Origin: Ophelia neglecta
Lineage: Eukaryota
Length of the DNA stretch: 64,000 nucleotides
Direction: 5' to 3'
Assembly (NCBI GenBank): GCA_965285935.1
Contig: OZ260665.1
Coordinates: 74,462,001-74,526,000 of the forward strand
The number at the start of each line of letters is the position of its first letter. Position 1 is the stretch's first letter. A program made the position numbers and the translations under genes. This document shows, one piece after another, positions 1 through 57,094 of the stretch. The notes beneath the pieces were generated by a model, which saw only the letters and a program-made list of their open reading frames with translations, ran no database searches and was not told the origin of the DNA.

Positions 1-1312
1 GTTCACTGGCTTTGTTAAATATACAAGGAACAAACTGCTGCCCCCTTCACACCGACGCAATGAACGGCATGCAAACAGCAGATAAACTACATCTAAACAT
101 CGTTGGAAATCGCACCATGCTTGTGTAATCCAATCAGTGAGCTCGGTTTTGTTTTTTGAATGCAAAGTGCCTTAAAAGGAATTTTTCCTCCGTGTTCTAT
201 TGTTCGTCTGATTGGCAAGTGGCGAAGAGGATACACTTTGTAACCAAAACAGCTAAATGGGCAAACCTGATCTGCTTTAGTTTCCAATAAAAATGTACTT
301 GGTAACCAAAGACAGACTGAATGTGTTAGGAGTACCTTCATATATATCAGTGTAGCAAAGTTTTGGCAAGGTGCGCACAAAGTACTTAAGATTTAGAAGG
401 TCAAACTTGTAAACAATGTAACAACGTCCATTGAGAGGTTTACAGTCACAAGTCTATGTGTAATTCAGCAGCTAGTTGAATTAAGGAAAGCAATGCTGTC
501 ATGAAATGTCAAAATGCATTATCAAGATAGGACCTAGAAAAACCAATGAAACTTCACCACTACTTTTGGCATAGTGTCAAATACTACTTTCCCTGGCATT
601 AATAATAAAGTAGTACATTAGGGCACAACCTAGAAATATAAACACTACTAACCTGGCCTGGGAAAGGCTGTGAAGGGCAGTTCTGCTGTGGAGAAATACC
701 ACTATCTCTATCAGAATCTGAAAAATTCATGAATGACAATCATTAGAAACACATAGAGGTTCTGAAAACTAGATTCAGGTTCACAAGACACTGAACATTG
801 ATACAACCAATAAGGAAAATACTGAAACCATACACCAACTTTAAACAAAATTATGGTTTTGAGAAAATTAACCCATGTTAATATTATGCAAACAGTTCTA
901 TGTTAATAAATCAGGCACTAGATGATAGTTACATCAGGAGTTTGAGGGTGATTATAAAGTGTGGTCCATGAAGGTGGCTGCCTTGTAACAAAATAGTCAT
1001 GTCAGTTTACAATGAAAGAAAGAAGAACACAATAAAAATCTGAGGGTTCCGCACTTGTATTGAGGTATTAATGATAAAAGGGGGTGGTATAAGTAGTGTG
1101 AAAACAGACAGTTCTGCCCTATGATAGTAGTTATAAATTTGGCCATTTTTTAAGAAGTGCGAAAAACTCAATTTTTAATTGCATTAAGTGGGTCTGAAAA
1201 AAACCTTGATCCAGCAGTTTAAGAACATGTTGACATGACTTAAGAGATGGCAGTATTTTGTTGACGACGAGACAGCCACCTTTAGGTATGAGAAATGATG
1301 AGGCCTGCCTAC

Positions 1313-11807: not shown

Positions 11808-11902
11808 CGTGATCAAGTCTCCCTCCTTGAAGGATATGTGGTTGGGCTCATGCATGTTACTGTACTCCTTCACAACCCTGGCCGTCACCGCATAGCTGGC
11901 TT
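11808..11902 (-). CDS. CASKIN: Caskin SH3 N-terminal half (E-ASYAVTARVVKEYSNMHEPNHISFKEGDLIT), phase 1 to 0
   Basis: 95 nt with TTTTTGATTACAG| acceptor and |GTGAGT donor. The split codon G+AA gives Glu. Matches Caskin [32 protein letters not shown]. Confidence 0.93.
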
Positions 11903-15545: not shown

Positions 15546-17157
15546 CAGGTCATATAGTTTCAGAGCGCTTGCTCTATGAAGGGACATCTGTAGCGTGGTA
15601 TTAAGTTCATCAAGGTATCGAAAGGATATATATATATATCTTAAATATACCAAAATATATACAGAAATATTCAATAATCACGATTATAAGGCCCATGTAA
15701 TGTTCAGTAACTATCAGATAGAATCAGTTGATCTTCCAGTGAAATTTTTTTAAATAAACAAGCAATTAAATCTAGGAGTTAAACAAGTTAAGATGAATAT
15801 TTCTGGTCTGCCTGAGATCAGCTAGCCATGTTCAAGTCTCCAGTTTCCTCGACAGCTCTGGATACAGGGTCTGTGCTGTGCTGGACGCGTGCCATGGATT
15901 GGCCGATGATCTAAATACCATGGATGGCCCCAGGATCTGCCAGGATTGGCATAGAATGAAAGTCATTATTGGCTGCCAGTACATTATCAAAAAGACAACA
16001 CAAACCTCTAATAAACACAGAAACCCTGGATGTTAATTCTCAGATCATGCATTCTTACTAAATTAATAAATATTTCACTGGCAGATTTAGTGGTGTACAA
16101 GGGTTTCAGACCTTTTTTTGTCCCACAGATAGTTCTAGGGATCGTATTGGATGGGTATGCTCTAGAGAAAAACTGCCCTGTTCAATACCCTAGAGCCACC
16201 TCTGTATCTAATATCCTCTATATAAATTGCCAGACTCAGCAGTTTTCTGCTTACACCAACAGAGTATTGTATATTAAGAAATGGCTAAAAATCTCTGAAT
16301 TTTTCCGAGATAAAAACAATCAAATTAGTGGCATAAAATAAATTGTAGTTTGGATTCACGGCTGAGACTATCTATCTCAATCCATTAGGCATTGAATGTT
16401 TGTGATAAAACAGAAAAACAGTGGCTATGTGCCATGGAACACAATCCAACTAAAATATGTTTCTCATTTAGTTTTTAATACTAGTGTTTGAATGATTTGA
16501 TGCTGGAATGATATGACAGAGAGACTGGGGGAAGGGAGGCCAGGGTAGTTCAGGTCCTCACTTACAGAGACAAACAAAGCAGGAATGCTTTACAGAGACA
16601 CTGAGGGGAGGCCAGGTCCTAGCAGGGACATAGCCACTGTCAGACTGGGGAAAAAACACAGGGTAGAGATATCAGAATTAGAGGGTGCAGGCTACTCACA
16701 GAGTCAGAATACAACCATCTTAGATGGTGCTGCCCACTTAGACTGAAATGATGTGATCTATCCGTTGAAAAGAACACACTAAACCCACAAACCATAATCT
16801 GACTCATAGCCCCTTGAAGTGGACCCTCCTCTCCATGGGTTTCTCCCTCTGGCCAGTGGCTTAAGGGGGGAACCCATGGAGTGGGTCCATTACATATGGC
16901 TTAAAGTCAAATAACGTTATGACAAGGTAAGAACAGTGAAGTGGACAGCTCCACTTACAATGATTCTACTAGGTACTGCAAGATACTGGTGAATTAAAAC
17001 GGCGGGTAAAGCTAACATAGAGAAGTGTTATGGAGGTGTTGACACTCAGACAGGTGGTGGTGAGTCTTAGCTATATACATGAAAACCACCTGATCTATCT
17101 CCTGACCTCACCCTGATAGACTGTAAATAAACACAGAATACAGGTAATATGTGTCTA

Positions 17158-17759
17158 GGCTACGTCAACACTAGACCATAACCTACAGGTGGTACAGAGG
17201 TGTGTCACCACTAGACCATAACCTACAGGTGGTACATAGGTATGTCACCACTAGACCATAACCTACAGGTGGTACAGAGGTATGTCACCACTAGACCATA
17301 ACCTACAGGTGATACACAGGTGTGCCACCACTAGACCATGACCTACAGATGGTCCACAGGTATGTCACCACTAGACCATAGCCTACAGGTGGTACACAGG
17401 TATGTCACCACTAGACCATAACCTACAGGTGGTACCCAGGTATGTCACCACTAGACCATAACCTACAGGTGGTACCCAGGTATGTCACCACTAGACCATA
17501 ACCTACAGGTGATACACAGATATGTCATCACTAGACCATAACCTACAGGTGGTACATAGGTATGTCACCACTAGACCATAACCTACAGGTGGTACACAGG
17601 TATGTCACCACTAGACCATAACCTAAAGGTGGTACACAGGTATGACACCACTAGACCATGACCTACAGGTGGTACACAGTGATGTCACCACTAGACCATA
17701 ACCTACAGGTGGTACACAGGTATGTCACCACTAGACCATAACCTACAGGAGGTCTACAG
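17158..17759. repeat. Minisatellite, 40-bp unit, ~15 copies
   Basis: Unit CTAGACCATAACCTACAGGTGGTACACAGGTATGTCACCA recurs exactly every 40 nt from 17171 to 17731. Confidence 0.97.
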
Positions 17760-18011
17760 ATAAACTTTACACTGCCAACTGATGCCAAGAAGTCTTACTG
17801 ACATATACCCTACCGGCACATGTTGTGTAGCTTATATATTATGCCCCATGCGTAGATATATACCATATGCTGATCTATGCCCTACATTATCACATGTGTC
17901 TATTTAATCTGTGCGCTACAAAATAACCGGTGTCTATCTGATATGTACATCCACATTGTGATAAGTGTCCATCTTATACATGTCCACCCACTGTATAAAA
18001 TGCCAATCCAC

Positions 18012-18140
18012 TGTATGACAACTGTCTACCTAATCCATACTCGCCCACCATGTGACAACTGTCTCCCTAATCCATACTCGCCCACCATGTGACAACTGTC
18101 TCCCTAATCCATACTCGCCCACCATGTGACAACTGTCTAT
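18012..18140. repeat. 37-bp tandem repeat, ~3.4 copies
   Basis: Unit TGTGACAACTGTCTCCCTAATCCATACTCGCCCACCA. Confidence 0.9.
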
Positions 18141-18421
18141 CTGATTCTTGCCACGTTTGTTGACAAGAGTTCTTTCCCTTTCATCCAGATGGCCAGAGCT
18201 CTACCAGAACTACAGTTACTACCAGCCTAACCTTGGCTTCAGATGTCAATCTCCCAGGGTCTGTCTGATATGTGGCCACACTACATAACAGATTGTGGTA
18301 TATCTACTCTTGATCTACCAGCCCCCCCCCCCCCCCCCCCCAACTCCATACGCATTAACTACAAAACTCTATTACTTCTATAATAAACTACCAGATGATC
18401 TTTTTTTTTTAATTACCACTA

Positions 18422-18624
18422 CAGTGCTCCCTGCCAAGAAGGGACCCCCTCTGATGAAGGGACCCTCCGATGAAGGGACCCTCCGATGAAGGGACTCCCT
18501 CTGACCACATTTTTCAATGCCCATTACTTATCTTACCTATGTTAATGCCCTGATGAAGGAACACCTGCTTTGTAGGGACACTTTTGCTTGGATGAAGAGG
18601 TTTCCCTACATCACAGGGACTACG
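18422..18624. mobile_element. MITE, family B-related, with internal CTCCGATGAAGGGAC expansion
   Basis: TA-CAGTGCTCCCTG...CAGGGACTACG. The body is collinear with 39387-39547 (CCTATGTTAATGCCC...GATGAAGG...GTAGGGACACTT). Confidence 0.7.
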
Positions 18625-18802
18625 GTTTATATCACTATATGACAGAAATAATCCATGCTTAACTATTTGCTCTTTACCATCAACAAGCTACTAGTAATAA
18701 AGCTCCCGAGTTTAGTATGAGAAGGCCGGGCCACCCAGGAGACATGAGAAGACACTACAGGACAGACATCCTGTAAAGGTGGCCTGGACCCAGCCAACTT
18801 AC

Positions 18803-18860
18803 CTCTCTTTTTGAGCTGCACTTTGCGAGCCCTATCCTGTGTACAACAAAGTAGATCCAT
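18803..18860 (-). CDS. CASKIN: Putative alternative first coding exon of Caskin (MDLLCCTQDRARKVQLKKR-E), in frame with the SH3 exon at 11902
   Basis: Start context ACAAG-ATG-G, in-frame TAA 9 codons upstream, consensus AG|GTAAGT donor in phase 1 matching the phase-1 acceptor at 11902. No transcript evidence available. Confidence 0.55.
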
Positions 18861-21800
18861 CTTGTCAAACTTATCCAACAGATATTATTTAAAATAACGC
18901 ACAACACAGAAGTCATCAATTGTGAATCTTCTTCATTAGTGATCGCCTGAAATCTCCTTGAGAATTGTCCTTGCTACTCTGCACAGAGCCACTGTTATAA
19001 TAATGCATTGTCACCAGTCACGGCAGAAGGTATCCGGACTTGTGCAGAAACAGGCTTAATTTGCCCAGCTAGAGCGGCAGGCATTTCTCACATGCCCTGT
19101 GCACTTGTGACAATCGCCCGCGGACTTCACTGCTCCTAATCCTATCGCACACAAAAAAATGGAGAATTACGCTGTCAATCTCAAGTAAGTTTTTGTCTCC
19201 TGTTTAGTGTCCGAGGGGGCCACTAGGTGCTCCGTAAAATGTGGCAGCTTCTTTGCACTAAAGATTAAAAACTCTGCGAGTGGATAACCCTTGGCTTGAC
19301 CTTGGTGATTCCTGTCGACTTGCCACCTCTCGGTGACCTCTCCCATCAATGTGTTAGTTTTTTAATGTCACCTCTGCCCGTCTTACCGACTCTCTCCGAC
19401 AGTCTTGGCTGGGAGAGAATCAGGATTACAAACAGTCTCAGCCTTCATGATCCAGATCATCAGCTCAAGGCTCCACATCTGATTAGGTTACAATCGGCAG
19501 GTATCTATATCCCACTAACAGTCCATGCCTACACCTAACCATTAATTTCTCCTACACTGCCTGATCTCAGCCCGTTCTCAGGTCCCTTCTCGGCCCGTTC
19601 TCAGCCCGTTCTCAGAGGAGGACCACCTCAGGAGTCCCAGAGGCCAGGTAGATTCTAATACATCCACAAATTGGAATCACTCCCACAAACAATTTACGAA
19701 CATCAAACTATTCCCTGTGCTATCTTTCATCTGACTCTGCTAAAGAGATTAGCTACAAGCTGTCAGCCAATGAACTCACCTCACCTGTTTAAACACATAA
19801 CCAGGATTTGTTGATGCGTTATACGTTTGATACAACTTAATGTAGATCAACCTGCCTTGTATTACAGCCTAGATAGCTTAGCCTAGCAGTTATCAGCCTA
19901 AAGACACTGTTTAATGGGTTATATAGCACAAAAGAGTGGTATCAAGTATATAGGATGGGTTTATAACTGGTGATCAGCTGGCATCTCTATCAGATTATCT
20001 GGGATGTGGAGGCAGCCCATCTACCAATACATGGTAGAATGGCACCCAATCTCTTTGGAATCACAATGTCCAGCACAATGTCCTCTGATATGAATGGATC
20101 TGCTCTCAATGACCACTGCTCTCATAGTCCCAGGGAAGCATGGATCCTGAAGCTGGAGGTCACAGAGTGCAATGAATCTACCTTATCAGCATGAGTCAAT
20201 TTTAAATATGCCTCGTCAGTCATAAACTGGTCCTAAAGGTGCTCCAAGAGGCATATACCAGTACTTCAGTTACCTTGTTGACACCCAAGTCACATAGTTT
20301 CCCAGTACAGTAGATTTACATCCTAGAATGCACCTTCAAGGCTTTCTGTGAGGTCAATCAGAGGTGATATCCTCACCAAAACTCAGCTATAGAGTCAATC
20401 CACAGATATCCAGAATTAGGCTGTTTTTGTTGTTGTTATTTCTGTATGCAGATCTATTTACAGTTAAGGCCAGTCTCCAGAACTATACCTTTTCCCTGTT
20501 AATCATTTGTCTATAGATCGGTTGCATGTTGTATTGTAGCCTCCTGACCCTCCTAGCTCCAGCTGTAGCTAGTTATGCTAACACCTGTGTTTTATATTCA
20601 TTGATACTTAGAACAAAGCCTTAGGCAGGCTTCAGGTATGTGGTGCACATACAAGCCACTGGTACACGATACATACAATGTCTCCATCAGAAAGGAAGTC
20701 ATCTATCACAGTACCCTACACCACCAGTTCCTTACAGTATCTAATATCCCTGGAAACAAAGCAGTTATGGTTTAGTATGGTTGCAGAGCCATGCTCCAGG
20801 TACAGTGCATGCACACAGAGGAGTTCTGCTGGTGTCTGCCACAGACGAGTGAGGAGCGCACTATTTGAAAACAGAAAATTCCCCGCGATACTGTTCCAGC
20901 ACACGCTGTGCTGAGATCCTGTTGTATAGCTGTGCTGTGAATCACAAATTGGCCCAGTAGGGGCAGCTTGCCCAGGTAGGGGCTAGTGATAGGGTGTGTG
21001 GGGCGTCAGCACCAGGATACAATAGGGAATACGTAGCACAGTAGACTAACGCCCAAATGACTTCAAATCCCAAAGACACCTAAATACTCCAATCACAGGG
21101 TTCTGATGCCAGACTTTAGAAGTAACCACTGATAAATGAAGTCCTAACAGACTTGGCCATACTGTTTCTGATGATGAAAGAGAAAAGCACCCTGACACTT
21201 ATAATTATATAAAACTAGTTATAATGAACTGCACAGAAACAAGGTCAACACCTTTATATATGTACTGTCTGGAGCACTCAAATCTCACAGAAAAAATCAA
21301 TGAAATTTGATATAAGATGCTCTAATTCTGAATGAAAACTTCAGATGGCTGGAAAACAGGAATCCTACATCAAAAGATGTCTGTTTGAAAAACAGGAATC
21401 ACAGTTTCAAAGGACAATAAAAAGTTCTGGACAATAAAAACAAGGTCCTCTATTATCTTATTAAACTCAAAAACTGTCAAAAACTGTCATAACTGCTGAA
21501 GCAGGTTGAGTGTATCAATCAAGACACTGCACTGTCTGACCAGACAGGCTGAGAGAGGTTTGATGTGATGGGGGTCTCTTCAATAGCAGATCCTGGTTGG
21601 TGATGAGTGCATTACAGCATCTTTTATAATGGTCCTAGCATGCATAATCCATGAGGGTTGTACTCTGTTGAATGAATATGTGGTAGATTAGATGGATGTC
21701 AAGTGTATGTGATCACAGATGTGATGTAAAGCTCTCAAACCATCATGTGATGTCACACTAAACAGTCTGCTTTGATTGATACTCAGTTAAGGGATGACAT

Positions 21801-23736
21801 GAGAACTTCAGTGTAGACAGACCCTGTATAGAAAAGGTCCTTTTAAGATAAACCAGGTTCTTATATAATATCCATTAGGCTAAAAACCGCTGGTATAATT
21901 ATCCTATTGTCATTATTAATAAGCATCAGGCAGGTCTAGATGGGTTGTGGTGGCACAGCATGACATCTATTCATCTCACCTCGACCTATACTAACAGTCA
22001 ACCTGGACAAAATATGGTGAATACAATCCAAACCTGAAATGTGAAGAGGCTGAATCAAGGTAAACAGCTCTAAACTTGGCTGAATGGCTGGGCTTGGTAA
22101 CCCTTGGATAGCTCTCCATTCAAACCCCTCCTCAATGTATATATATGAAAAAAGACCATCTTGAATTCCCCGCAGTGAATCTATTGATATTTTAAGTAGG
22201 GTGAGGTCCTTTTACGAAATTCATCTGTCACTGTTGACATACAAGCATTGTGTCTGAAAGGGGAATTCAAACTTAAAAATTAACTGCTAGCTGCTCTGGC
22301 AGGATGCAGGACTGCACAAGTAGGACCTTGGCACCAACTCGCTAATTCACTGGTGACAAAATACTGTAAAAACAAATTCCCAAACAGTTAAATATTCACA
22401 ATAACCATCTACTTGTGTTTAAATCCCAGATCTTAAAAATAAATCCTGGCAAAAAAATGAGTGATATGAACAATATTCCCACAAACTTTTCCACTTTTAC
22501 ATTACACACCCAATTCCCTGGTATTCACAACCTGCCTACAATATATTTTGTTTAAAGTAAAAAACCACCTATTCTGCAGCAGAAACTGTAGTTACCTCCT
22601 ACAGTTTATCTCCAGTTTTCATACTACATCTAAAAAAGGAAAGGAGACAAACTTGTTTTCCGCAGTTTGAGCAGCAATTAATCTATAAGAGGGGATTGAT
22701 TTCAAAACACTCCCCATCAAATTTCTTAGGAGATCTGTTTACCAGAAATGTACTTAGCTTTTTTTGGTCCCTTTTGTTCATAATAATTTTTACCTGCCAA
22801 TCAACCAGGAAAGCTGAATCTCTAATGTTAGATTGTCAGATTTTCTTTAAAATGTTCACCAGAGAAAGATGACCTTGTCTTTATGTCTGTTGGTCCTTCT
22901 TTGTATGTTTTGTCAGTCTAACCAGGAGACATTTTGTCCAGTAATTGAGCGAGGGATGGCTAGCAGAGAGGCCTGATGTCAGATGATGTCTTCTACTGTA
23001 CCCCAGCGCAGGTGATAATTACAATCAAATCAATGCCTTTATCAGCAAAATCTCCAGTCCAGCTAATCAAAGATATCAGATATTTTAGTCAGTATTGTCA
23101 GATGGTCACACTAATACTGGCCAAATGCTGCTACCTACAAAACAGGTCTGCAGGCTTGACCAGGTGTTTTTTATCATCACTAACATCAAAATTGAACAAA
23201 ATCTGTCAACAACTTATAATGATAGGGGACTACACTACTAGATGGCCAGGGGCCAAACATTCTCACAAAGTGATGTGGTTAGCCGGAGTCGATGGAAGAG
23301 TTATTAGAAAACGGCCCACAGCCATAAGAACTGAATCATATCGGTTCCACGCCAATGACCGCGTCCTCTGGTGTTCTAGTCCAATCTCAGTGAAATTTGT
23401 AAACAAGGACTGATGAACAATACCTCACTTTACTGTGTCTATCAAAAAGGCATGTTTGCACATTCCACAGGCCTGGGACAAACATGATGAACTCCCATCA
23501 CACTCCCAACATAAATTTGGCACCTTAAGAGCCTTAAAATGTCAAATCATACAAAGGCACTTGTTTGTACCTTGAAAGATGAGACTGGAGCATTGATAAC
23601 AACACTGTGGGACCCAGTGAATCTTCTCTTGTCACTGCAGTCATTAAATCAGCACTTCAGGTAGATAAGTACATTATTGTCTATTCAATGGCTGTCACCA
23701 TCTATTATGTGGTGGTGAACAAGGATCCACAACTGT

Positions 23737-24773
23737 CTAGGCCTGATCTGGGTACTGTCAAATACACTGTCAGGGCACCACAACAACCTAGGTCTGATCT
23801 GGGTACTGTCAAATACACTGTCAGGGCACCACGACAACCTAGGTCTGGTCTGGGTACTGACAGATACACTGGCAGGGCACCACAACAACCTAGGTCTGAT
23901 CTGGGTACTGTCAGATACACTGGCAGGGCACCACAACAACCTAGGTCTGGTCTGGGTACTGACAGATACACTGGCAGGGCACCACAACAACCTAGGTCTG
24001 ATCTGGGTACTGTCAAATACACTGGCAGGGCACCACAACAACCTAGGTCTGGTCTGGGTACTGTCAGATACACTGGCAGGGCACCACAACAACCTAGGTC
24101 TGGTCTGGGTACTGACAGATACACTGGTAGGGCACCACAACAACCTAGGTCTGGTCTGGGTACTGTCAAATACACTGTCAGGGCACCATAACAACCTAGG
24201 TCTGATCTGGGTACTGTCAAATACACTGTCAGGGCACCATAACAACTTAGGTCTGACCTGGGTACTGTCAGATACACTGGCAGGGCACCACAACAACCTA
24301 GGTCTGGTCTGGGTACTGTCAAATACACTGGCGGGGCACCACAACAACCTAGGTCTGATCTGGGTACTGTCAGATACACTGTCAGGGCACCACAACAACC
24401 TAGGTCTGATCTGGGTACTGTCAGATACACTGTCAGGGCACCACGACAACCTAGGTCTGGTCTGGGTACTGTCAGATACACTGGCAGGGCACCATAACAA
24501 CCTAGGTCTGATCTGGGTACTGTCAAATACACTGGCAGGGCACCACAACAACCTAGGTCTGGTCTGGGTACTGTCAAATACACTGGCAGGGCACCACAAC
24601 AACCTAGGTCTGGTCTGGGTACTGTCAGATACACTGTCAGGGCACCACGACAACTTAGGTCTGATCTGGGTACTGTCAAATACACTGTTAGGGCACCACA
24701 ACAACCTAGGTCTGATCTGGGTACTGACAAATACACTGGCAGGGCACCACAATAACCTAGGTCTGATCTGGGT
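23737..24773. repeat. Minisatellite, 51-bp unit, ~20 copies
   Basis: Unit CTAGGTCTGRTCTGGGTACTGTCARATACACTGKCAGGGCACCACAACAAC. It explains the three 17-aa-periodic ORFs. Confidence 0.97.
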
Positions 24774-27043
24774 AGAGTTAAATACAATGATGCCACTTAT
24801 GTCTAGGTCCCTATAAGGGGCCCTTTCTCTCTAGGTCCAACATTGGGCTTTTAAAAACTGTTTTAAAAGTGATCTATGCCCCTCCCTTTGGAGAGGGTAG
24901 TAAAACCTTATCTGGGATGAGGCCCTCAAACATTTATACCCTTGTACACCCATCCACATGGCTGAAAAAGAATCCACCTATTTAATAAAGGTGATTCAAG
25001 GCAGAAATTGAATATCCAAGTGTCCAGTCACTAACTCATGGTCAAATGGTCAGTGAGTATGCGGAGATTCAGCGACTTCCTCCCAAGCCATCCAGATGGC
25101 CGCCTCTTGTATGAATGGTCTCCAAAACTTTATTATGATTATATTCCGCCCAGTATAATTTGAGACTCTCTGCAAACTGTCCGTTGTGTGTATTTCATGC
25201 ATAATTTGAAGGTCGGCTGATATCAAATTTAATGAAATGTTGTTCACTGAAACTTTAAACCTTAATCCATTTGTGTTGTGACCCGGGAGGCCATGATATG
25301 AAAACCACTGCAAAAAAAGGAATTGAGTTCCTACCAAAGGCCTTGGATACTGAGGAGTGAATTCACTAGTGAAAAACTATTGACCTTTGACCCTCTAGGA
25401 TAATAGTGTCATGCACTCGCCGATCAGAATCAAAGATGGAGTTCACAACACGTTTTACCGTTTTACTGGTTTACTGAGAAAAAACACTGACAGGTGACTC
25501 ACAAGTTAGGCTATCAGGTAGAGATTATCTGGCTGAGGACTGAATGATACCACATCTACCAGCTCTAATCCACAGTGATCAGCCAATAATCCACATCTCC
25601 TATGTGATAATCCACAGAATCAGTGTGATAATCTGCAGACCACAACTTCTGAGATTCTGTTAGCATTTAATCGACTTTCAAATTAAATTGATCTTCATTG
25701 ATGGAAGAAGTTTACCCGTGAAACCTGCAGTGGCGTTACGTTCCTGGTTACATTAACAAAATGAGCAGTATCACTTATCCTGGAGTGAGTAATTGACTCA
25801 ATTTCTGAGCAAAGCTCAAATAAGAATACGATGCCGGGGAATTTCCTGGCAAAATCCTTGATGTTAAGTAATCAATGTAATGGTAGCTTTAGCAAATCGC
25901 ATGAAAATCACTAGGTGAAGCGAGCGACGGCTGTTTTTAATCAGGATAATGTTTTTCTCTGCAAACAGATCAGTAGCAGTTTCATGAAATATCTTCACAG
26001 GGGCCAACATGAGGTTTTGCACAAGGAGTGGAGGGGGGGGGGGGGGCTAACATGGAGAGGGTGGTAGGATAGTTGCCCCTGCCAGAGGGGGCCTAGTAGC
26101 TAATTCCCCAGACCCCCCCCCCCCATGTGATGGGACACCAATCACACCTTCAAGGCTCTTGAAAACAATTTGTCAAAAGATAATTGGTGTCCAAACTCCA
26201 ATGTGCCCCATCTAACCTGCCAGTACTCTACCGCTGTGAAAGATGGAGAGTTATGGAGAGATCAAGATGTCAGTTCTGGAAAGCTTAACATGAACGAGCC
26301 CACTTGTAACATTCAAACAACTGACACATAGACCAAGGGGGCATAGGCAAAACTTTGTGAAAGGGTCCCCCGAGATTTACCACTGAGGTAAATAAATAAT
26401 TAATTTTTAGATAATGCACCTTTTCATGTTCGGAAAGCAACGTAAACTTTTTTTATAAGCAAGGTCTTCCAAATACCACAGATAATAAACTGTATGAATC
26501 GTATGCCTCAGTGATTTACTCCTGATGGATTTTGATATAGTCAACACTTGTAGATCTAGACTGAGCATGATGAATCACTGAGTAACAATACTGAGTTAAA
26601 TTCTATTAAACGTCATTTTGCATTAAGTTTTAATCTATTGTGAAGTACTTGGTGAGCTCCCCAGACTGGATGGTCCCCTTGTAATATCAGCCAAACCAAT
26701 TCTCCCCACTCGCACACATCAGCATTCATTGGCCTCTGATCCCAGTCTGAGTCAAGCTCAGAGTCATCAAACTGTCTACTGAGCTCAGCCTCTAAGCTCC
26801 CCAGCCACACAAACCCTCATCAGTCTGCCATCACTTGTCTGTGAAGGTCCAGAAGACTCCAGACACCTGTCTGTTAAGGTCTATAAGTCACCCGACAGAT
26901 GCCATTCTCTACTCAACAGCCATCAAATAAAGCTTGGGTAGACAAATACTCTCAATGGTGAATTGGGAGGTTGTGGGGGGGGGGGGGAGTAAGAGATGGT
27001 CTTGAGGCCTATTCACAGGGGTGGGAGGTGTTTCCCTCCCGAA

Positions 27044-29745: not shown

Positions 29746-32700
29746 ACATTCTCCTAGAGCTGCCCCAATCTCCCAGCAGCTTTAGTCCTCATCAGTCCAG
29801 TCTGATGACCAAATAAAATCTGAGGAGGGAAATTTACACCACAGAGACAGAGTAATGAGATTCTCTATAAAATAAAGATGATTTCACAGCAAATTGAGCA
29901 AATCAGGTGTTGAGCAAATCTAGGTCATGCTGCCCCCTGCCCCACTGTGTACTCAACTGAGCCTGAAATCTAATCAGCCCAGGCTCAAAAGTTTGTTGGG
30001 CAAATTTCTCCAGGGGAAAAATAAAGCAGAAATTGAATTAGAGAGCAAAATTGGAATAGAACCTAGTCAGGGGTGGGCGTTATTACCGTTTGTGTGATCA
30101 TACACACAAATTTAGAGGCAATGACGAAGGATGGGCAATGGACTGCAGGACTGAATACTAGGGAGTCCCTTACAGAGGAAATGAGACAGGCAGAGGATTG
30201 GGTGCTAGTAAACTGAGCTCCATTTATATGCTAGGCATACTCCAAGCTTCCTGCCAGCATCACTTTAACACAATAAAACATGTCACAGAAGGCCAGATTT
30301 TGCTAGAATTTTCTAAAACAGAGTCTTGTATCATGACCAGGGGGTGTGGGTGCCTCCTCCCAGAGGGGGAGGGGGGAGGAGGGGGGGGGGCTGAGGGCTT
30401 AGGCCCCAGACCCCCCCCCCCCTTGGTAGCTAGGAGGCATGCTTAAAAACACACTGGGAAACATGTAGAAGAGATGGAAAACAGGAGGGATAGAGGCAGA
30501 AATGCAGAAACCTCATACATAGAGAAGAAGCATGCCACAAAGTAATAACCTCGTGGGGGCCTGACTTGTGTCTTTCACACCAGTAAAATGATGGATCAGG
30601 AGAATATAGAATATTAAATTTCCATACAGCTATCCACAAGTGGCAAATCTTGGATATAAAGGCATCAAAGTAAAAAGGATATGGCTGGAATTCACTTTAT
30701 AATTTACCATTGGGGAACAATGTAAGACTTTTTATGATGGAGTGTATAGGGAAATTTCTATAAAAGCTTCCAAGCAGAGTCCAATTACATGACTGGGATG
30801 TCATTCAACATGTTCAATGGCCATTTTCTAGTCACTTTATGCTGTTGATGGAAAATTCATGCATGTATTGGTCATTGATTCTCCAATATGAACTTGATAC
30901 TTGGGCCGGATGGGACTGAATGGAGTAACGGCCAAATCGTGTAGCGGCTAATACGTGCAGCTAGTTACCAGTAAACCGCATTGTGTTCATGCATGCCTGA
31001 CCATAAACAAAGTGAAATCAGGTAAATCGTGGAGTTTGTTCCACCAATCACGATGTGGTCAGGTTGTCAAAGCTATGGGCACGTGCAGTGACAATAGTGC
31101 CTCAATCAGAAGCTAGAAAAATTATTTAATTATCAAATAAAACAGCCTGTAATTGCACCGACACCGTGCCGATCTGAAGCTGAAATGGGTTGTAATTACC
31201 ACTTGGAGCATCAGCAAGGCCTTCACCTGTAAGTTCAGCCAGCATGACCGAACAACAGGAAATTATTGTGGTCGAAATGGGTGAAAAGGCGAGGGGCTAG
31301 AAAGAGCAGGTAAATGGCAGAGTGCCAGACATGCCGCTGGTTTCTTGACGGGCAGTTTGAATAACCTTCGTACTGACGTAGATGGAACTCCCATGAAAAC
31401 AAGACCCCAGCTCTGCAGGCCGAGCCTCCATGAGAAGGTTATGGGGGGAGTTCTACTATGTAGGGTAGCAGGTAACTCTATATGGATAATAGACTATTTA
31501 TTTTCAATATATACATGCATCCATTGAGAGGCAGTGGATGAAAATAGTTTGTTTGTCAGTTGATCTGCCTTGCCTCATACCTGGCCTAGGTACACTTTGA
31601 CCTCCTGTGACATCTCTAATCAAAACTTACACTGTCCGGGGTATTTTGGGAAAGTCTTTGGGGGGAGGTAGGATGGTCTAAAAGGGTGGTGTAAACCCTA
31701 ACCTGATGGGAGTGGGATGGGAGTCCCCTCCCAGAAGGGTGGGAGGAGGGATGGGCTGAAACCCCAGCCACCCTACTGGTAAAAGACACTCATTCCACTC
31801 CTAAGCTCCCACCCCACACCCACACAGTGTCCTCCGGAGGAGCCACTTGCGGATTCACAAGGGTAGGTCTTTACCGTGCGCCCCCCTCTAGATCCAGCCT
31901 CCAGTCCCAGCCAACCACACAGGCCTAGCTGTTTTCAATCCTATGTTAACTGTCGATGGGTCAGGCGACCCTGAGGTAAGACATCCTTCAGGATGGGCAG
32001 CTGCTTAGACCAATGTTTGCCAGGCAAAATGATCGCTGACAAGCTCGTGTTAAAACCACCCTTGAAAGAGCAGTGTCAAGTTCACCATTCATTTCAAAGT
32101 TTACAAATCCTCACCGACTTTTCTTGTAGGTAGATTCAAACATCTAACTGTTTTTCTTGCCAAAGTGAGAGTTGGGATGAGATTTCCAGAGTAAATAACG
32201 TGACAATTCAGCTCTACACTCACCCGATTGTACAAGGCTACAAACTATTTGGAAAAAGATAGACACAATTGATTTCATTTTAAAGTAGTGAATGATCTGG
32301 TTATCCCAGGTAAACATACCAAGGAAATCACCAGGCATGCTCTTTGTGGGTCGCATCGAGAAATGTTTTGAACTTGAAGAAAGTACAAAAGGAAAGGAAC
32401 TATAGAAAACACTGGGTTAATTCCCAAACAGAGACTGATCTGTCATCGGTGGGTGGCAACACACAATTAACAAGCCTAAAAACCTACATACAACAATCTG
32501 ACACATCATACTATAAGTTTTGATGGCGATGAAGTATTTCCTTCTGAAAGAAAGCTTCGATATCCGACGGCGGATTGTAGATAATAAAACGGGTGTGCTT
32601 TCACAAAGTTTTGTCTTTCACTTATGTTCAAGATAATAAGAAAATGTATGTATATTTTTCTCCCCACTTCACTTACTGCACACTGGAATTCACTGAGGTT

Positions 32701-36654: not shown

Positions 36655-36763
36655 CTTTCAACAGAGACTTCAGTTCTTTTGCTGCTCTCGAGGTAGTGAA
36701 TTTATTTACAATATCCAATGCCGTTTGGTCGTAGGAATTTGGTCGGTTCACATCTATTCCACA
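36655..36763 (-). CDS. CASKIN: Caskin last ankyrin/linker exon ([37 protein letters not shown]), phase 0 to 1
   Basis: 109 nt with TTGTTTTCAG| acceptor and G|GTGAGT donor. Matches Caskin [37 protein letters not shown]. Absent from the ORF track. Confidence 0.94.
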
Positions 36764-42500: not shown

Positions 42501-43840
42501 AGCAACTGTTTTCAATAGGGGGCCTGAGATGGTGATTTGGGCTGTCAAGGGGGGTGGGGGGGGCAGCGTTATTTAGAATTAGATATTGTTGGATTAATTG
42601 TGTGTTTACCTTTCTGTGCATGACACAACACATAATAGTAGTACAATAATAGAAGTAGCAATAATTCCAAAATACTACTTAATCTTTCAATACTACAGCC
42701 CTCTACAGAGGGCAGATACCCATTTAGTTCCAGATATCCAGAGTTGAAAGAGAGAAGGAGAAAAACATTTAGAGTAGTTAACTTGTAATAAAATAGACAG
42801 TAATACTCCTTTGACATGAGGGGACAGGACAGGCCAGGACTGATAGCATCCACATGCTAGAAGCCCCTTTATTTTTGAATATTTCTATAAGCTTTTCGAC
42901 TCCCTTTCACATGGTAGAGCCTTGAATTACTCCATCACCAAGAAGTGTCTAAGTCACAGTCAATGAAGACAAAACAGAACTGCAATAAAACCAAAATAAA
43001 ACTTGCTGAAACAGACACGAGCATGTGTTTTGTCAGACTGGCACTCAAAAAATGCCAAACTAGTAGAATACCTGAGAAACAGGCCCCTATTTTAAGCTGA
43101 CAGGATTTACCAAGCACAATAATTGGCTTAATCAAAGGTATTTTTCTTAACAAGATACAGCTGGGAGAAGGAAGGTGTGATTATCACAAGGGGCCCTAAT
43201 GTTAATGGGTTAGTAAATGAACTGTAATTAACTAAAACCCAAGTTGTAAATCAACACTACAGGACCTGAAATGTGGGATCCACTGGTGTTTATGTTTTAA
43301 TTACTCATTTCAAAGTAAATTCTGCCATGTTTAACTGATGATACCATCATCCCTCCTCTTCACTGGCTCTTCCCTAACACATTTTTCTTCCATAAGTAAT
43401 TAATGGATCAAAGACAGCAAAAGAAAAAGTTTTTGTAGACAGTGAATCACAAGGAAAAATTCAGGTTTGAAAGGAATCTCTTTTACAGTAAGAATATATA
43501 AAATAATGAGATAAATATCAAAGAATGATGCCACAAAATAAACAGAAACAGAAATTCTATTTTTTTCACATTGATAAAGTGCCATTTAGTCTCATGTACA
43601 TGTATGTACTAGAAATGACAGCCAACACATCCAAAATTGAGTGCAACTGAGTGAGAAGGTGCATAGACATGCAGCTACAACGCTCACAAGATGGGAGTGC
43701 AGCTGGCTATGGGCGGTCACACTGCAGCTGGAAAGGTGCTTTTATTGCAGCCCAAAATGTGTGGCAATTGTCCCTATTGATTAAGCAGACCCACAATAAT
43801 ACCTTGCTTGGCCCCAGTACCCTTTAGGCAGGGAGACTCC

Positions 43841-44206
43841 CATGATAACAGACTCCCCTCCAGGGGGAGACACCCATCCCCCACCCTCACCATGATAACA
43901 GACTCCCCTCCAGGGGGAGACACCCATCCCCCACCCTCACCATGATAACAGACTCCCCTCCAGGGGGAGACACCCATCCCCCACCCTCACCATGATAACA
44001 GACTCCCCTCCAGGGGGAGACACCCATCCCCCAACCTCAACATGATAACAGACTCCCCTCCAGGGGGAGACACCCATCCCCCACCCTCACCATGATAACA
44101 GACTCCCCTCCAGGGGGAGACACCCATCCCTCACCCTCACCATGATAACAGACTCCCCTCCAGGGGGAGATACCCATCTCCCACCCTCACCATGACAACA
44201 GACCCC
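43841..44206. repeat. Minisatellite, 50-bp unit, ~7.3 near-identical copies
   Basis: Unit CATGATAACAGACTCCCCTCCAGGGGGAGACACCCATCCCCCACCCTCAC recurs every 50 nt. Confidence 0.97.
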
Positions 44207-54884: not shown

Positions 54885-55530
54885 GGAAGCTGTGTGATGG
54901 GTGTCTGTTCCCAAAGGGGTTCTATGTCTTAGGACCCCACATGGGTCTGCTAGCCCTTGGAAGAAGTGGGATAGGTGTCTGTTCCCAAGGGGTTCTGGGT
55001 TTTAGGACCCCCCATGGGCCTGCTAGCCCTTGGAAGATGTGTGATGGGTGCCTGTTCCCAAAAGGGTTCTATGTCTTAGGACCCCCCATGGGTCTGCTAG
55101 CCCTTGGAAGAAGTGGGATGGGTGTCTGTTCCCAAGGGGTTCTGGGTTTTAGGACCCCCCATGGGCCTGCTAGCCCTTGGAAGATGTGTGATGGGTGCCT
55201 GTTCCCAAAAGGGTTCTATGTCTTAGGACCCCCCATGGGTCTGCTAGCCCTTGGAAGAAGTGGGATGGGTGTCTGTTCCCAAGGGGTTCTGGGTTTTAGG
55301 ACCCCCCATGGGTCTGCTAGCCCTTGGAAGATGTGTGATGGGTGTCTGTTCCCAAGGGGTTCTGGGTTTTAGGACCCCCCATGGGCCTGCTAGCCCTTGG
55401 AAGATGTGTGATGGGTGCCTGTTCCCAAAAGGGTTCTATGTCTTAGGACCCCCCATGGGTCTGCTAGCCCGTGGAAGATGTGGGATGGGTGTCTGCACCC
55501 AAAGGGTTATGGGTCTTAGGATCCCCCAGA
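54885..55530. repeat. Tandem array of alternating 74/73-bp monomers (147-bp higher-order dimer), ~8.7 monomers
   Basis: GGAAG unit starts at 54885, 54959, 55032, 55106, 55179, 55253, 55326, 55399 and 55473. Confidence 0.93.
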
Positions 55531-57094
55531 GGGGATGGCTGTGTCCTCCTAAAGGGGGCTCTGGAGGCTAAGCTTCCCCCCCCCTTCCCCCCTCCCCAAG
55601 TAGATGCGGCCATCCCACACCCTCTACCTGCACCCGGACCACCCAGAGAGCACCCTAGCACCCATAGTTCACAATCATGTCATTCACTTTATCTCAAATG
55701 CATACATTGAAAAATAATTAAGGCCACCGTACATGTACGCTAAAATGATGGGAAACTGACTCTGTTTAAAGCAACATAAAAATTACTGAGAAACACACAT
55801 TCTAGTTTAGATTCTTAGTACAAACATTTTTTAATGTAGCAGACACAACATTCACTTTGCTGTCATGTTTCATTCAGCTACTTAAACAGTTCATCGGCAG
55901 AGAGCGAGGGTTTAATTTGCACGTCAGACGCGGAACATGACAACCACCAATATCAACATCCTTCCTGTTTTTTGTTAGCAAAGCAAAACCAAGAAAAATG
56001 CTTAAATTCTCACTGGATCATAGTTTTCCACAAGGTCACCCACAACTGGCTGCCATCTTGAACAAACACTTACTCAGTTCAGGCCCTGGCTGCCCCGGTA
56101 ACAGGCAAAAAATCAAACGATTCTATAAATATTGACCTTTCAGCAGTAAATCATGGACACCACAGTTTACAATACATGCTAACGTCCTAATGACTGAGAG
56201 GCTCTGGTCAGTGTCCCCCCTGGTGGATTTAGAGGGGAAACACAGGGGTACAGGCCCCCCTTCTTTATACCTGTCAAAATCAGTAGGCACTGTTGGAATT
56301 CAACAGGCCCTCAAAATTTACCACAAAAATGTGCTGCCAAAAAATATACAGGCCCACCAGGCATGGAGGGTTGTATTATAATAGGCCCGCAGCTAAAGTG
56401 AGTGGCCCTGGCCTACAGGCCTATGCTTATTTTTTTCCCTGAGATAGTAAACACCCATCTCCCACCCTCATTTATCCCGCAGAGCACCCTCTGGGAGCAG
56501 ACACCCATATCCAACCCTCACTCAGGCCTCAGACCATCCTCTGAGAGAGGAGACCCTACATCTGACAATGGTGCCCCTCTGTGCTTTGAGGGAGTAAAAC
56601 AGAGGTCAGTTTATTTACCTCAGAGGTCAGTTTATTTGCCGAGGACATTAGACAAGCAGGGGTTCTTCTGTGTATACCTCAAGACACATACAGACCCTCT
56701 AGTATGTACATTACCATAACTCATCATGGAGATACCACAAACATTGGGCAAAACCTCAAAGCCTGTTCGTATCCCGATGGTAAGGGGGAGCTGGAAAGGG
56801 GGAGCCAGAAAGGGGGAGCCAGAAAGGGGGAGCCAGAAAGGGGGATGACGGGTCTTATACCCTTTACTTCCTGGATAACAAAGTAACAGTTCAAATTTAT
56901 CAAGCTACAGAATACCAGTATGAAAAGGGTTAAATTAATAGGGCCTAAGGCAAACTTATCCAAACTGGATATTAATATTGAACTCAAAATAGCATAAACT
57001 TAGTTATCAAACTTACTGGCCAGTTCTGATAATTCTTCACCTTTGGTAGTTAGGTGACCCCAAAAGGTTCTTCAAATGTCAACACAATGTCCAC

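What the first reader, a model, noticed from the sequence alone, without database searches (positions are those of the whole stretch)
18797..18887. Hidden internal first exon predicting an ankyrin-less, membrane-anchored Caskin isoform
Seen: inside the 24.75-kb intron between the last ankyrin exon and the SH3 exons, the minus strand reads TAA-(8 codons)-ATG GAT CTA CTT TGT TGT ACA CAG GAT AGG GCT CGC AAA GTG CAG CTC AAA AAG AGA G|GTAAGT. The ATG has A at -3 and G at +4, and the donor is a full consensus. Its phase 1 joins G+AA at 11902, giving MDLLCCTQDRARKVQLKKR-EASYAVTAR...SH3. Established: an N-terminal Cys-Cys pair followed by a basic cluster is an S-palmitoylation/plasma-membrane signal, as in GAP-43 (MLCCMRRTK). 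Inference: an internal promoter swaps the ankyrin module for a lipid anchor, like the alternative palmitoylated N-termini of PSD-95/SAP97 alpha and GRIP1b. I do not know of this being described for Caskins. Caveat: an upstream out-of-frame ATG near 18915 overlaps it.
Basis: partly seen in the sequence, partly recalled or inferred. Interest (0 to 1): 0.85.

Follow-up and report, generated by a model that had tools for sequence, protein, structure and literature searches.

The report
Alternative lipid-anchor first exon of Caskin
A 58-base start-codon-to-splice-site stretch inside the big intron of this invertebrate's only Caskin gene is very probably a real alternative first exon; it would give a short Caskin with no ankyrin repeats and a Cys-Cys plus basic membrane-anchor-like start, a form that other worms and molluscs also have but nobody seems to have studied.

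Summary
The letters are exactly as described. On the minus strand there is an in-frame TAA, 8 codons, then an ATG at 18860 with A at -3 and G at +4. Nineteen codons follow (MDLLCC, then five Lys/Arg), then G|GTAAGT. The phase and split-codon base match those of the last ankyrin exon, so both donors give Glu in front of the SH3 exon at 11902.

By simulation, chance gives a strong donor plus a Kozak ATG in 2.7% of such introns, and the full pattern in 0.1%.

The organism has no RNA data: the only three runs that hold the stretch are DNA. The support is therefore comparative. An mRNA-like contig of another lophotrochozoan (P0114) starts MNLLCC plus a basic run and joins at the same Glu-Ala-Ser junction. 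Cephalopod transcripts from four runs, and RefSeq isoforms of Biomphalaria, Lymnaea and Patella, also carry short Cys and/or polybasic starts joined there. The 400 bases upstream of the exon are in the top 1% of the intron for CpG content, which looks like a promoter.

Verdict: a real alternative first exon, probability about 0.8. Palmitoylation is plausible but untested. Such isoforms already exist in public annotation, though I found none described in papers. It is a new member of a known kind, of moderate interest.

The parts
18803..18860 (-). Coding part of the proposed alternative first exon: ATG, 19 codons, plus the first base (G) of a split Glu codon
   Evidence: Read directly. It is the only strong-donor candidate in the intron. 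It ties for rank 1 of 1570 ATG-started peptides of the window for likeness to the P0114 N-terminus.
18797..18802 (-). Splice donor GTAAGT, phase 1
   Evidence: Donor score 7.56 bits, joint best of 1661 GT sites in the intron.
18885..18887 (-). In-frame TAA, 8 codons upstream of the ATG
   Evidence: As a cassette exon entered in phase 1 from the AG at 18871-18870 it would hit a TGA at once, so it can only be a first coding exon (read).
19000..19399 (.). CpG-rich patch directly upstream of the exon; possible unmethylated internal promoter
   Evidence: CpG observed/expected is 0.69 with 16 CpGs, against an intron median of 0.18. Only 0.8% of 400-base windows of the intron reach this value.
11808..11902 (-). 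First SH3 exon of Caskin, the shared acceptor exon (starts AA|GCC AGC...)
   Evidence: blastx to Owenia Caskin residues 278-313.
36655..36763 (-). Last ankyrin exon; its donor AAAG|GTGAGT has the same phase and split base as the proposed exon
18914..18916 (-). Upstream out-of-frame ATG in weak context, which would matter only if transcription starts above it
   Evidence: The transcript contigs of the related short forms also carry upstream ATGs.

Best explanation
This is a real alternative first coding exon of the genome's single Caskin gene. It is probably driven by an internal promoter in the 24.75-kb intron between the ankyrin and SH3 exons. Its transcript would splice from 18803 to 11902 and encode a Caskin that lacks all ankyrin repeats. 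That protein would start with Met-Asp-Leu-Leu-Cys-Cys and a cluster of five Lys/Arg, followed by SH3, the tandem SAM domains and the proline-rich tail. By analogy with GAP-43, PSD-95 alpha, LIMK1 and GRIP1b, the Cys pair is probably S-acylated, and together with the basic cluster it would hold the scaffold on a membrane. What is shown: the sequence signals, their rarity by chance, the same exon junction in relatives, and a near-identical start in another lophotrochozoan. What is inferred: use of the exon in this animal, promoter activity, acylation and membrane targeting.
For: (1) The signals are complete and the phase matches. (2) Chance is low: 2.7% for donor plus Kozak ATG and 0.1% with the CC/basic pattern, and this is the only strong candidate in the intron. 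(3) P0114 starts M-N-L-L-C-C plus a basic run and joins at Glu-Ala-Ser before the SH3 domain. Its 5.6-kb intron-free contig L008 has an in-frame stop upstream of the ATG. A genomic relative, L013, shows that the likeness begins exactly at the SH3 exon border, so the start is a separate spliced exon. (4) Other short starts join at the same junction. The cephalopod form P0026 occurs in four runs. Biomphalaria X6 and a second annotation of it, Lymnaea, Patella X3 and X4, Biomphalaria X5, Mercenaria, Nucella and Tubulanus X5 all carry one. (5) The candidate ties for rank 1 of 1570 ATG peptides in the window for likeness to the P0114 start. (6) A CpG-rich patch lies directly upstream, in the top 1% of the intron. 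(7) N-terminal Cys pairs or single Cys in alternative starts of synaptic scaffolds are known palmitoylation sites (PMC7802216).
Against: There is no RNA run for this organism; the three runs that hold the stretch are DNA at a flat 10-25x depth. No orthologous intron of a close relative could be read: the one related contig (ENA, L015-L017) ends about 1.9 kb upstream of the second SH3 exon. The nearest named relatives, Owenia and Lingula, show no such isoform among the models seen; Lingula X2 and X3 start before the last ankyrin exon instead. The organism behind P0114 is unknown and sits on a long branch, so its likeness could be convergence. Two upstream ATGs lie within 80 bases. The cephalopod and Patella X3 starts have no cysteine, so acylation is not a constant feature. 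The CC/basic pattern was picked after seeing it.
Confidence: 0.62

Rival explanations
1. The exon is real and makes an ankyrin-less Caskin, but the start works without S-acylation. It might bind acidic lipids through its basic cluster alone, or serve only as a short leader whose effect is simply the loss of the ankyrin module.
For: The cephalopod start (P0026) and Patella X3 (P0207) are polybasic with no cysteine. Pecten X4 and Tubulanus X5 have neither a Cys pair nor a clear anchor motif. The vertebrate Caskin1 SH3 domain is itself reported as lipid-binding (title of PMC7830187).
Against: The Cys pair at positions 5-6 is shared with P0114. A Cys at position 3 is shared by Biomphalaria and Lymnaea. 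A second, Cys-rich class of start (M-K-F-C-L-P-x-C) is conserved between gastropods and bivalves. Conserved cysteines in a short disordered leader point to a modification.
Confidence: 0.2
2. It is a chance open frame next to a chance GTAAGT in a long intron, is never spliced, and its likeness to P0114 is coincidence.
For: 13% of simulated introns carry a strong donor with some in-frame ATG in the right phase. There is no RNA evidence. A plus-strand peptide elsewhere in the window scores as high against P0114 over 8 residues.
Against: The full pattern occurs in 0.1% of simulations. About 1 in 1500 random ATG peptides match the P0114 start this well, and P0114 was found through its Caskin body, not through its start. 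The junction is the one used by all known short forms. A CpG-rich patch lies just upstream.
Confidence: 0.15
3. The stretch belongs to a repeat element or to another, nested transcript, not to Caskin.
For: Very high-copy repeats lie close by, at 18337-18670 and 16667-17000.
Against: The 501 bases around the exon match only themselves in the 762-Mb genome. Read depth over 18671-19338 is at single-copy level. No long open frame or other gene signal is present on either strand.
Confidence: 0.03

Closest known systems
Unnamed lophotrochozoan Caskin short form P0114 (Logan contig of run SRR14039593, locus L008)
   Same: The start is M-N-L-L-C-C followed by Lys-rich residues. There are 20 residues before the same Glu-Ala-Ser junction in front of the SH3 domain, and no ankyrin repeats. 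An upstream in-frame stop and short upstream ORFs are present.
   Different: Only 6 of 20 columns are identical, and P0114 has a third Cys. The organism is unknown and lies in a long-branch clade apart from this genome's nearest kin. Its exon could not be seen in genomic DNA.
RefSeq isoforms: caskin-2-like X6 and X5 of Biomphalaria glabrata (XP_055874762.1, XP_055874761.1) and caskin-2 X3 and X4 of Patella vulgata (XP_055955085.1, XP_055955086.1); Lymnaea stagnalis CAL1530621.1
   Same: They are ankyrin-less Caskins whose short alternative first exon joins directly to the first SH3 exon at the same codon. Their starts carry an early Cys plus Lys/Arg (M-L-C-L-L-K-R), a polybasic run, or a Cys-rich motif.
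   Different: These are molluscs, not this lineage. None has the adjacent Cys pair. They are computer-predicted models whose RNA support I could not inspect. No counterpart of the M-K-F-C-L-P-x-C class was found in this intron.
PSD-95 alpha / SAP97 alpha, GRIP1b and pABP-L: synaptic scaffolds with alternative palmitoylated N-termini
   Same: Same logic: an alternative 5' exon gives a scaffold protein a short Cys-containing start that is S-acylated and sets its membrane or synaptic targeting (PMC7802216; the alpha/beta naming is from my own knowledge).
   Different: These are unrelated proteins with no sequence homology. In them the alternative start replaces an L27 domain or a short leader, not an ankyrin-repeat module. 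Acylation is shown there by experiment, not here.
GAP-43 and LIMK1 N-terminal Cys-Cys motifs
   Same: An adjacent Cys pair within the first 8 residues is flanked by hydrophobic and basic residues. For LIMK1, Cys7/Cys8 palmitoylation targets the protein to spines (PMC7802216). The GAP-43 Cys3/Cys4 motif is from my own knowledge.
   Different: In those proteins the start is constitutive, not an alternative exon. The resemblance is of motif only.

Membership tests
Caskin (CASK-interacting protein) gene | N-terminal ankyrin repeats, one SH3 domain, tandem SAM domains, and a long Pro-rich tail with a conserved C-terminal end | tested here: met
   Exon-by-exon blastx of the window and of downstream loci to Owenia, Lingula and other Caskins gives 47-86% identity in the order ankyrin, SH3, SAM, tail. 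It is the only such locus in the genome.
Alternative first coding exon (alternative promoter isoform) | ATG preceded by an in-frame stop, and a donor whose phase fits the shared downstream exon | tested here: met
   The phase and split base match those of the canonical upstream exon.
Alternative first coding exon (alternative promoter isoform) | Spliced transcripts and 5' ends in this organism | not testable with these tools
   No RNA run of the organism is available; the three holders are DNA.
Alternative first coding exon (alternative promoter isoform) | Conservation of the exon in other species | tested here: inconclusive
   One near-identical start (P0114) and several same-junction short starts were found in other phyla and classes. 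The orthologous intron of a close relative could not be reached.
Alternative first coding exon (alternative promoter isoform) | Promoter-like signature upstream | tested here: met
   CpG observed/expected is 0.69 against an intron median of 0.18, in the top 0.8% of windows. No clear TATA or Inr was found, so this support is weak.
N-terminal S-palmitoylation / polybasic membrane anchor (GAP-43, PSD-95 alpha, LIMK1 type) | Cys or a Cys pair within about the first 10 residues, next to hydrophobic and basic residues | tested here: met
   Leu3-Leu4-Cys5-Cys6, with five Lys/Arg at positions 10-19.
N-terminal S-palmitoylation / polybasic membrane anchor (GAP-43, PSD-95 alpha, LIMK1 type) | Cysteines kept in orthologous starts | tested here: inconclusive
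   They are kept in P0114. Biomphalaria and Lymnaea have one Cys. The cephalopod form and Patella X3 have none.
N-terminal S-palmitoylation / polybasic membrane anchor (GAP-43, PSD-95 alpha, LIMK1 type) | Thioester-linked fatty acid on the cysteines and Cys-dependent membrane binding | not testable with these tools
   This needs acyl-biotin exchange or metabolic labelling, and imaging.

The most novel reading that the evidence does not exclude
Caskin of lophotrochozoans has an old two- or three-promoter design. Besides the ankyrin-bearing form, internal first exons of at least two classes give ankyrin-less scaffolds that are pinned to membranes by lipid and charge. One class is Cys plus polybasic, as here and in P0114. 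The other is the Cys-rich M-K-F-C-L-P-x-C class of gastropods and bivalves. This would be an invertebrate parallel to the alpha/beta switch of PSD-95-type scaffolds, and it has gone unnoticed in the Caskin literature.
Probability: 0.45. Interest if true: 0.6.

Novelty: new member of a known kind. Interest (0 to 1): 0.5.

Why it matters
Caskins are synaptic and LAR/PTP-sigma-linked scaffolds, and their ankyrin module and odd SH3 domain are poorly understood. A conserved isoform that drops the ankyrin repeats and gains a membrane anchor would mean that the SH3-SAM-tail part works on its own at membranes. It would also give a natural 'domain deletion' for dissecting what the ankyrin repeats do. 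Genome annotation of this unannotated species should carry the exon. More generally, the case shows that short first exons hidden in long introns can be recovered from sequence signals plus cross-phylum isoform comparison when no RNA exists.

Tried and rejected
- RNA evidence: the one run search found only three runs of one sample, all DNA. Laying them gave flat 10-25x depth, repeats and heterozygous differences, but no joints at the exon.
- Heterozygosity: one haplotype contig has no difference between 18795 and 18975, but fewer than one was expected, so this says nothing.
- Protein searches for more M-x-L-L-C-C starts: P0114 residues 1-90 found only itself. The first 190 residues with the region restricted found only three genomic SH3-exon reading frames.
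- Metagenome scans: both scans, one with the N-terminal alignment and one with the P0114 5' part, found nothing.
- Related genomes: the genomic relative of P0114 (L013) ends 2.47 kb upstream of its SH3 exon without the exon. Walking the ENA contig of a closer relative reached only the second SH3 exon before the contig ended.
- Paralogue test: the genome has a single Caskin locus.
- Class-B exon (K-F-C-x-P-x-C): none in this intron.
- Run accessions of the transcript contigs were not found in any paper.
- Earlier notes of the scan for this place: none.
All searches were exon by exon or with database proteins.
- Repeat-element and nested-gene readings were rejected because the stretch is single copy.

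Full report
**Observation**

Every letter of the finding is in place on the minus strand.
- TAA lies at 18887-18885, followed by eight sense codons.
- The ATG is at 18860-18858, with A at -3 and G at +4.
- Nineteen codons follow, reading M-D-L-L-C-C-T-Q-D-R-A-R-K-V-Q-L-K-K-R, then a single G at 18803, then GTAAGT at 18802-18797.
- The first SH3 exon begins at 11902 behind ...gattacag and runs to 11808.
- The last ankyrin exon (36763-36655) ends AAAG|GTGAGT, so the intron is 36654-11903, 24,752 bases.

Both donors leave one G, so both joins give Glu in front of Ala-Ser-Tyr-Ala-Val.

If the stretch were entered as an internal exon from the only nearby AG (18871-18870) in phase 1, a TGA would follow at once. 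It can therefore only be a first coding exon.

The 501 bases around it occur once in the 762-Mb genome.

**Chance**

I scored all 1661 GT sites of the intron with a simple donor matrix. This donor is the joint best, and it is the only strong donor preceded by an in-frame ATG in the needed phase.

In 2000 third-order Markov copies of the intron:
- a strong donor with any such ATG appeared in 13%;
- with a Kozak-type ATG, in 2.7%;
- with CC in the first ten residues and four or more Lys/Arg, in 0.1%.

The last figure is for a pattern chosen after it was seen, and the scan looked at many introns. On its own this is suggestive, not decisive.

**RNA**

The single run search returned three runs of one sample, none on record as RNA. 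Laid on 16500-21500 they behave as genomic DNA. Depth is an even 10-25x, with two very high-copy repeats at 16667-17000 and 18337-18670, and there are no joints at the exon. One haplotype contig shows no difference between 18795 and 18975, but fewer than one was expected. Use of the exon in this animal could therefore not be tested.

**Gene identity**

Exon-by-exon comparison of the window and of 60 kb downstream, fetched, shows ankyrin, SH3, SAM and tail exons in Caskin order. They are 47-86% identical to Owenia fusiformis Caskin-1-like, and the summed scores are highest for the Lingula, Owenia and Lineus proteins. The genome has one Caskin locus. Earlier notes call the genome probably annelid, which fits but was not tested further.

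**Comparative evidence**

I used the large tail exon to fetch Caskin representatives. I then used the Owenia protein to list 120 relatives with names, and opened ten clusters to see their isoforms. I looked at which proteins have the SH3 domain within 60 residues of their start. A set of short alternative starts appears, all joined at the very codon used here (Glu/Asp-Ala/Val-Ser):
- P0114 has M-N-L-L-C-C, then a Lys-rich run with a third Cys, 20 residues in all.
- Biomphalaria glabrata isoform X6, a second independent annotation of it, and Lymnaea all have M-L-C-L-[LA]-K-R...
- A cephalopod form, P0026, has M-F-R-R-K-S-K-K-K-N-K.
- Patella vulgata X3 has a 23-residue polybasic start.
- A second, Cys-rich class (M-K-F-C-L-P-x-C...) is shared by Patella X4, Biomphalaria X5, Mercenaria and Nucella.
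- Tubulanus X5 and Pecten X4 have other starts.

Ankyrin-less Caskins made from first exons inside this intron are thus common in lophotrochozoan gene models.

**Transcript support for two of the short forms**

P0026 sits on intron-free contigs of 3.4-3.8 kb in four separate runs. Each contig has a stop four codons above the ATG. By tree and identity it belongs with the cephalopods.

P0114 sits on a 5.6-kb intron-free contig (L008) with a 117-base leader and an in-frame stop at base 49. Two upstream ATGs form a short ORF that ends overlapping the main ATG.

A genomic contig of a relative of that organism (L013, from a JGI metagenome) has the same gene split by introns. Its likeness to L008 starts exactly at base 178, the first base after the proposed junction, and the 2.47 kb upstream hold no match. 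The M-N-L-L-C-C start is therefore a separate, spliced exon and not intron read-through.

**How telling is the likeness?**

The two starts share M1, L3, L4, C5, C6 and one Lys, with Asp against Asn at position 2. Against the P0114 start, the 18860 peptide ties for first place among all 1570 ATG-started peptides of both strands of the window. The other top scorer lies on the wrong strand and stops after eight codons.

P0114 was reached through its SH3-SAM body, not its start. The chance that one of about a dozen real short starts would match a spurious frame this well is therefore of the order of 1%.

In a tree, P0114 lies with two other unnamed proteins on a long branch inside Lophotrochozoa. 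This is apart from the Owenia-Lingula-nemertean group, which scores best against this gene. Either the exon is old or the same motif was reached twice. Both readings speak for function.

**Promoter hint**

The intron is strongly CpG-depleted: median observed/expected is 0.18 in 400-base windows. The 400 bases just upstream of the exon (19000-19399) reach 0.69 with 16 CpGs. That is the highest CpG count among the top-ranked windows, and only 0.8% of windows reach the same ratio. About six such patches exist in the intron, so this is modest but independent support for an unmethylated start region. No clear TATA or Inr was seen.

Two upstream ATGs lie within 80 bases: one at 18936 opens a 6-codon ORF, and one at 18916 is in weak context and overlaps the main frame. 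The verified leaders of the related short forms also carry upstream ATGs, so this caveat is weak.

**Function**

A Cys pair at positions 5-6 behind two leucines, followed by five basic residues, fits what is known of N-terminal S-acylation signals. The review PMC7802216 lists PSD-95 Cys3/Cys5, LIMK1 Cys7/Cys8, and GRIP1b and ABP-L Cys11, the last two in alternative N-termini. The GAP-43 motif I know from memory.

Across the related Caskin starts, the constant theme is a polybasic run, with early cysteines in three lineages and a separate Cys-rich class. Membrane targeting is therefore the likely common function. Acylation is likely here but not universal. None of this can be tested with these tools.

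**Literature**

The library held 409 papers that mention Caskin. Among the 30 listed, none had a title or abstract opening about isoforms or lipidation, and two papers searched in full had no mention of isoforms or palmitoylation. The isoforms exist only as database models.

**Verdict**

The exon is very probably real, about 0.8. The reading of a lipid or charge anchor is plausible. The idea is not categorically new, because it repeats a known scaffold-protein logic and the short forms are already in public annotation of other species. I did not build or search a joined spliced model; everything was done exon by exon or with database proteins.

Noticed in passing
window 32223-32356, minus strand: This is the second-best candidate of the same kind in the intron. 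In-frame ATGs at 32356, 32338, 32317 and 32278 are followed by a CGG|GTGAGT donor in phase 1 (44-residue frame from the first ATG). It lies on another CpG-rich patch (32200-32700). It could be a further alternative first exon. No likeness to known short starts was seen.
   Followed up: partly
window 19779-19784, minus strand: Two overlapping strong donors (GAG|GTGAGT and CAG|GTGAGG) lie about 0.9 kb upstream of the exon on the gene strand. They might end a non-coding leader exon, or they might be chance.
   Followed up: no
window 16667-17000 and 18337-18670: These are very high-copy repeats: summed contig depth is in the tens of thousands against 10-25 for the flanks. The second one starts only about 130 bases into the intron behind the proposed donor.
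   Followed up: partly
window 23688-24830; also 43780-44190 and 54925-55680: Long tandem arrays give open frames of hundreds of codons in several frames on both strands. They are minisatellites inside Caskin introns, not genes.
   Followed up: no
L006:3601-3786 (G000:C8:74435601-74435786), minus strand: This Caskin exon is absent from my open-frame list. It is 76% identical in DNA to the ENA relative (L016:15564-15755) and matches Owenia Caskin residues 484-523.
   Followed up: partly
window 651-723: A 73-base stretch is 79% identical to the ENA relative (L016:830-902), just downstream of the exon at 1306-1511. It is either a small exon or a conserved non-coding element.
   Followed up: no
L015-L017 (ENA ERZ25069296, contig ctg21268_4x_l): An unnamed relative has 70-86% exon DNA identity but much shorter introns: about 100-130 bases where this genome has 500-900, and 15 kb against 27.5 kb for the large intron.
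   Followed up: partly
G000:C9 12.5-23.6 Mb and C12 62.6-64.3 Mb: Dozens of long intron-free open frames (up to 2241 codons) are full of ankyrin repeats and clustered on two chromosomes. They form a large expanded ankyrin-repeat gene family unrelated to Caskin.
   Followed up: no
P0082 and P0194 (Lingula), P0066 (Patella X2), P0084 (Biomphalaria X4): A further kind of short Caskin form starts with a small alternative exon joined to the last ankyrin exon. For example, the Lingula X2 start has an early Cys and a Lys run. No matching ATG exon was looked for upstream of 36763 here.
   Followed up: no
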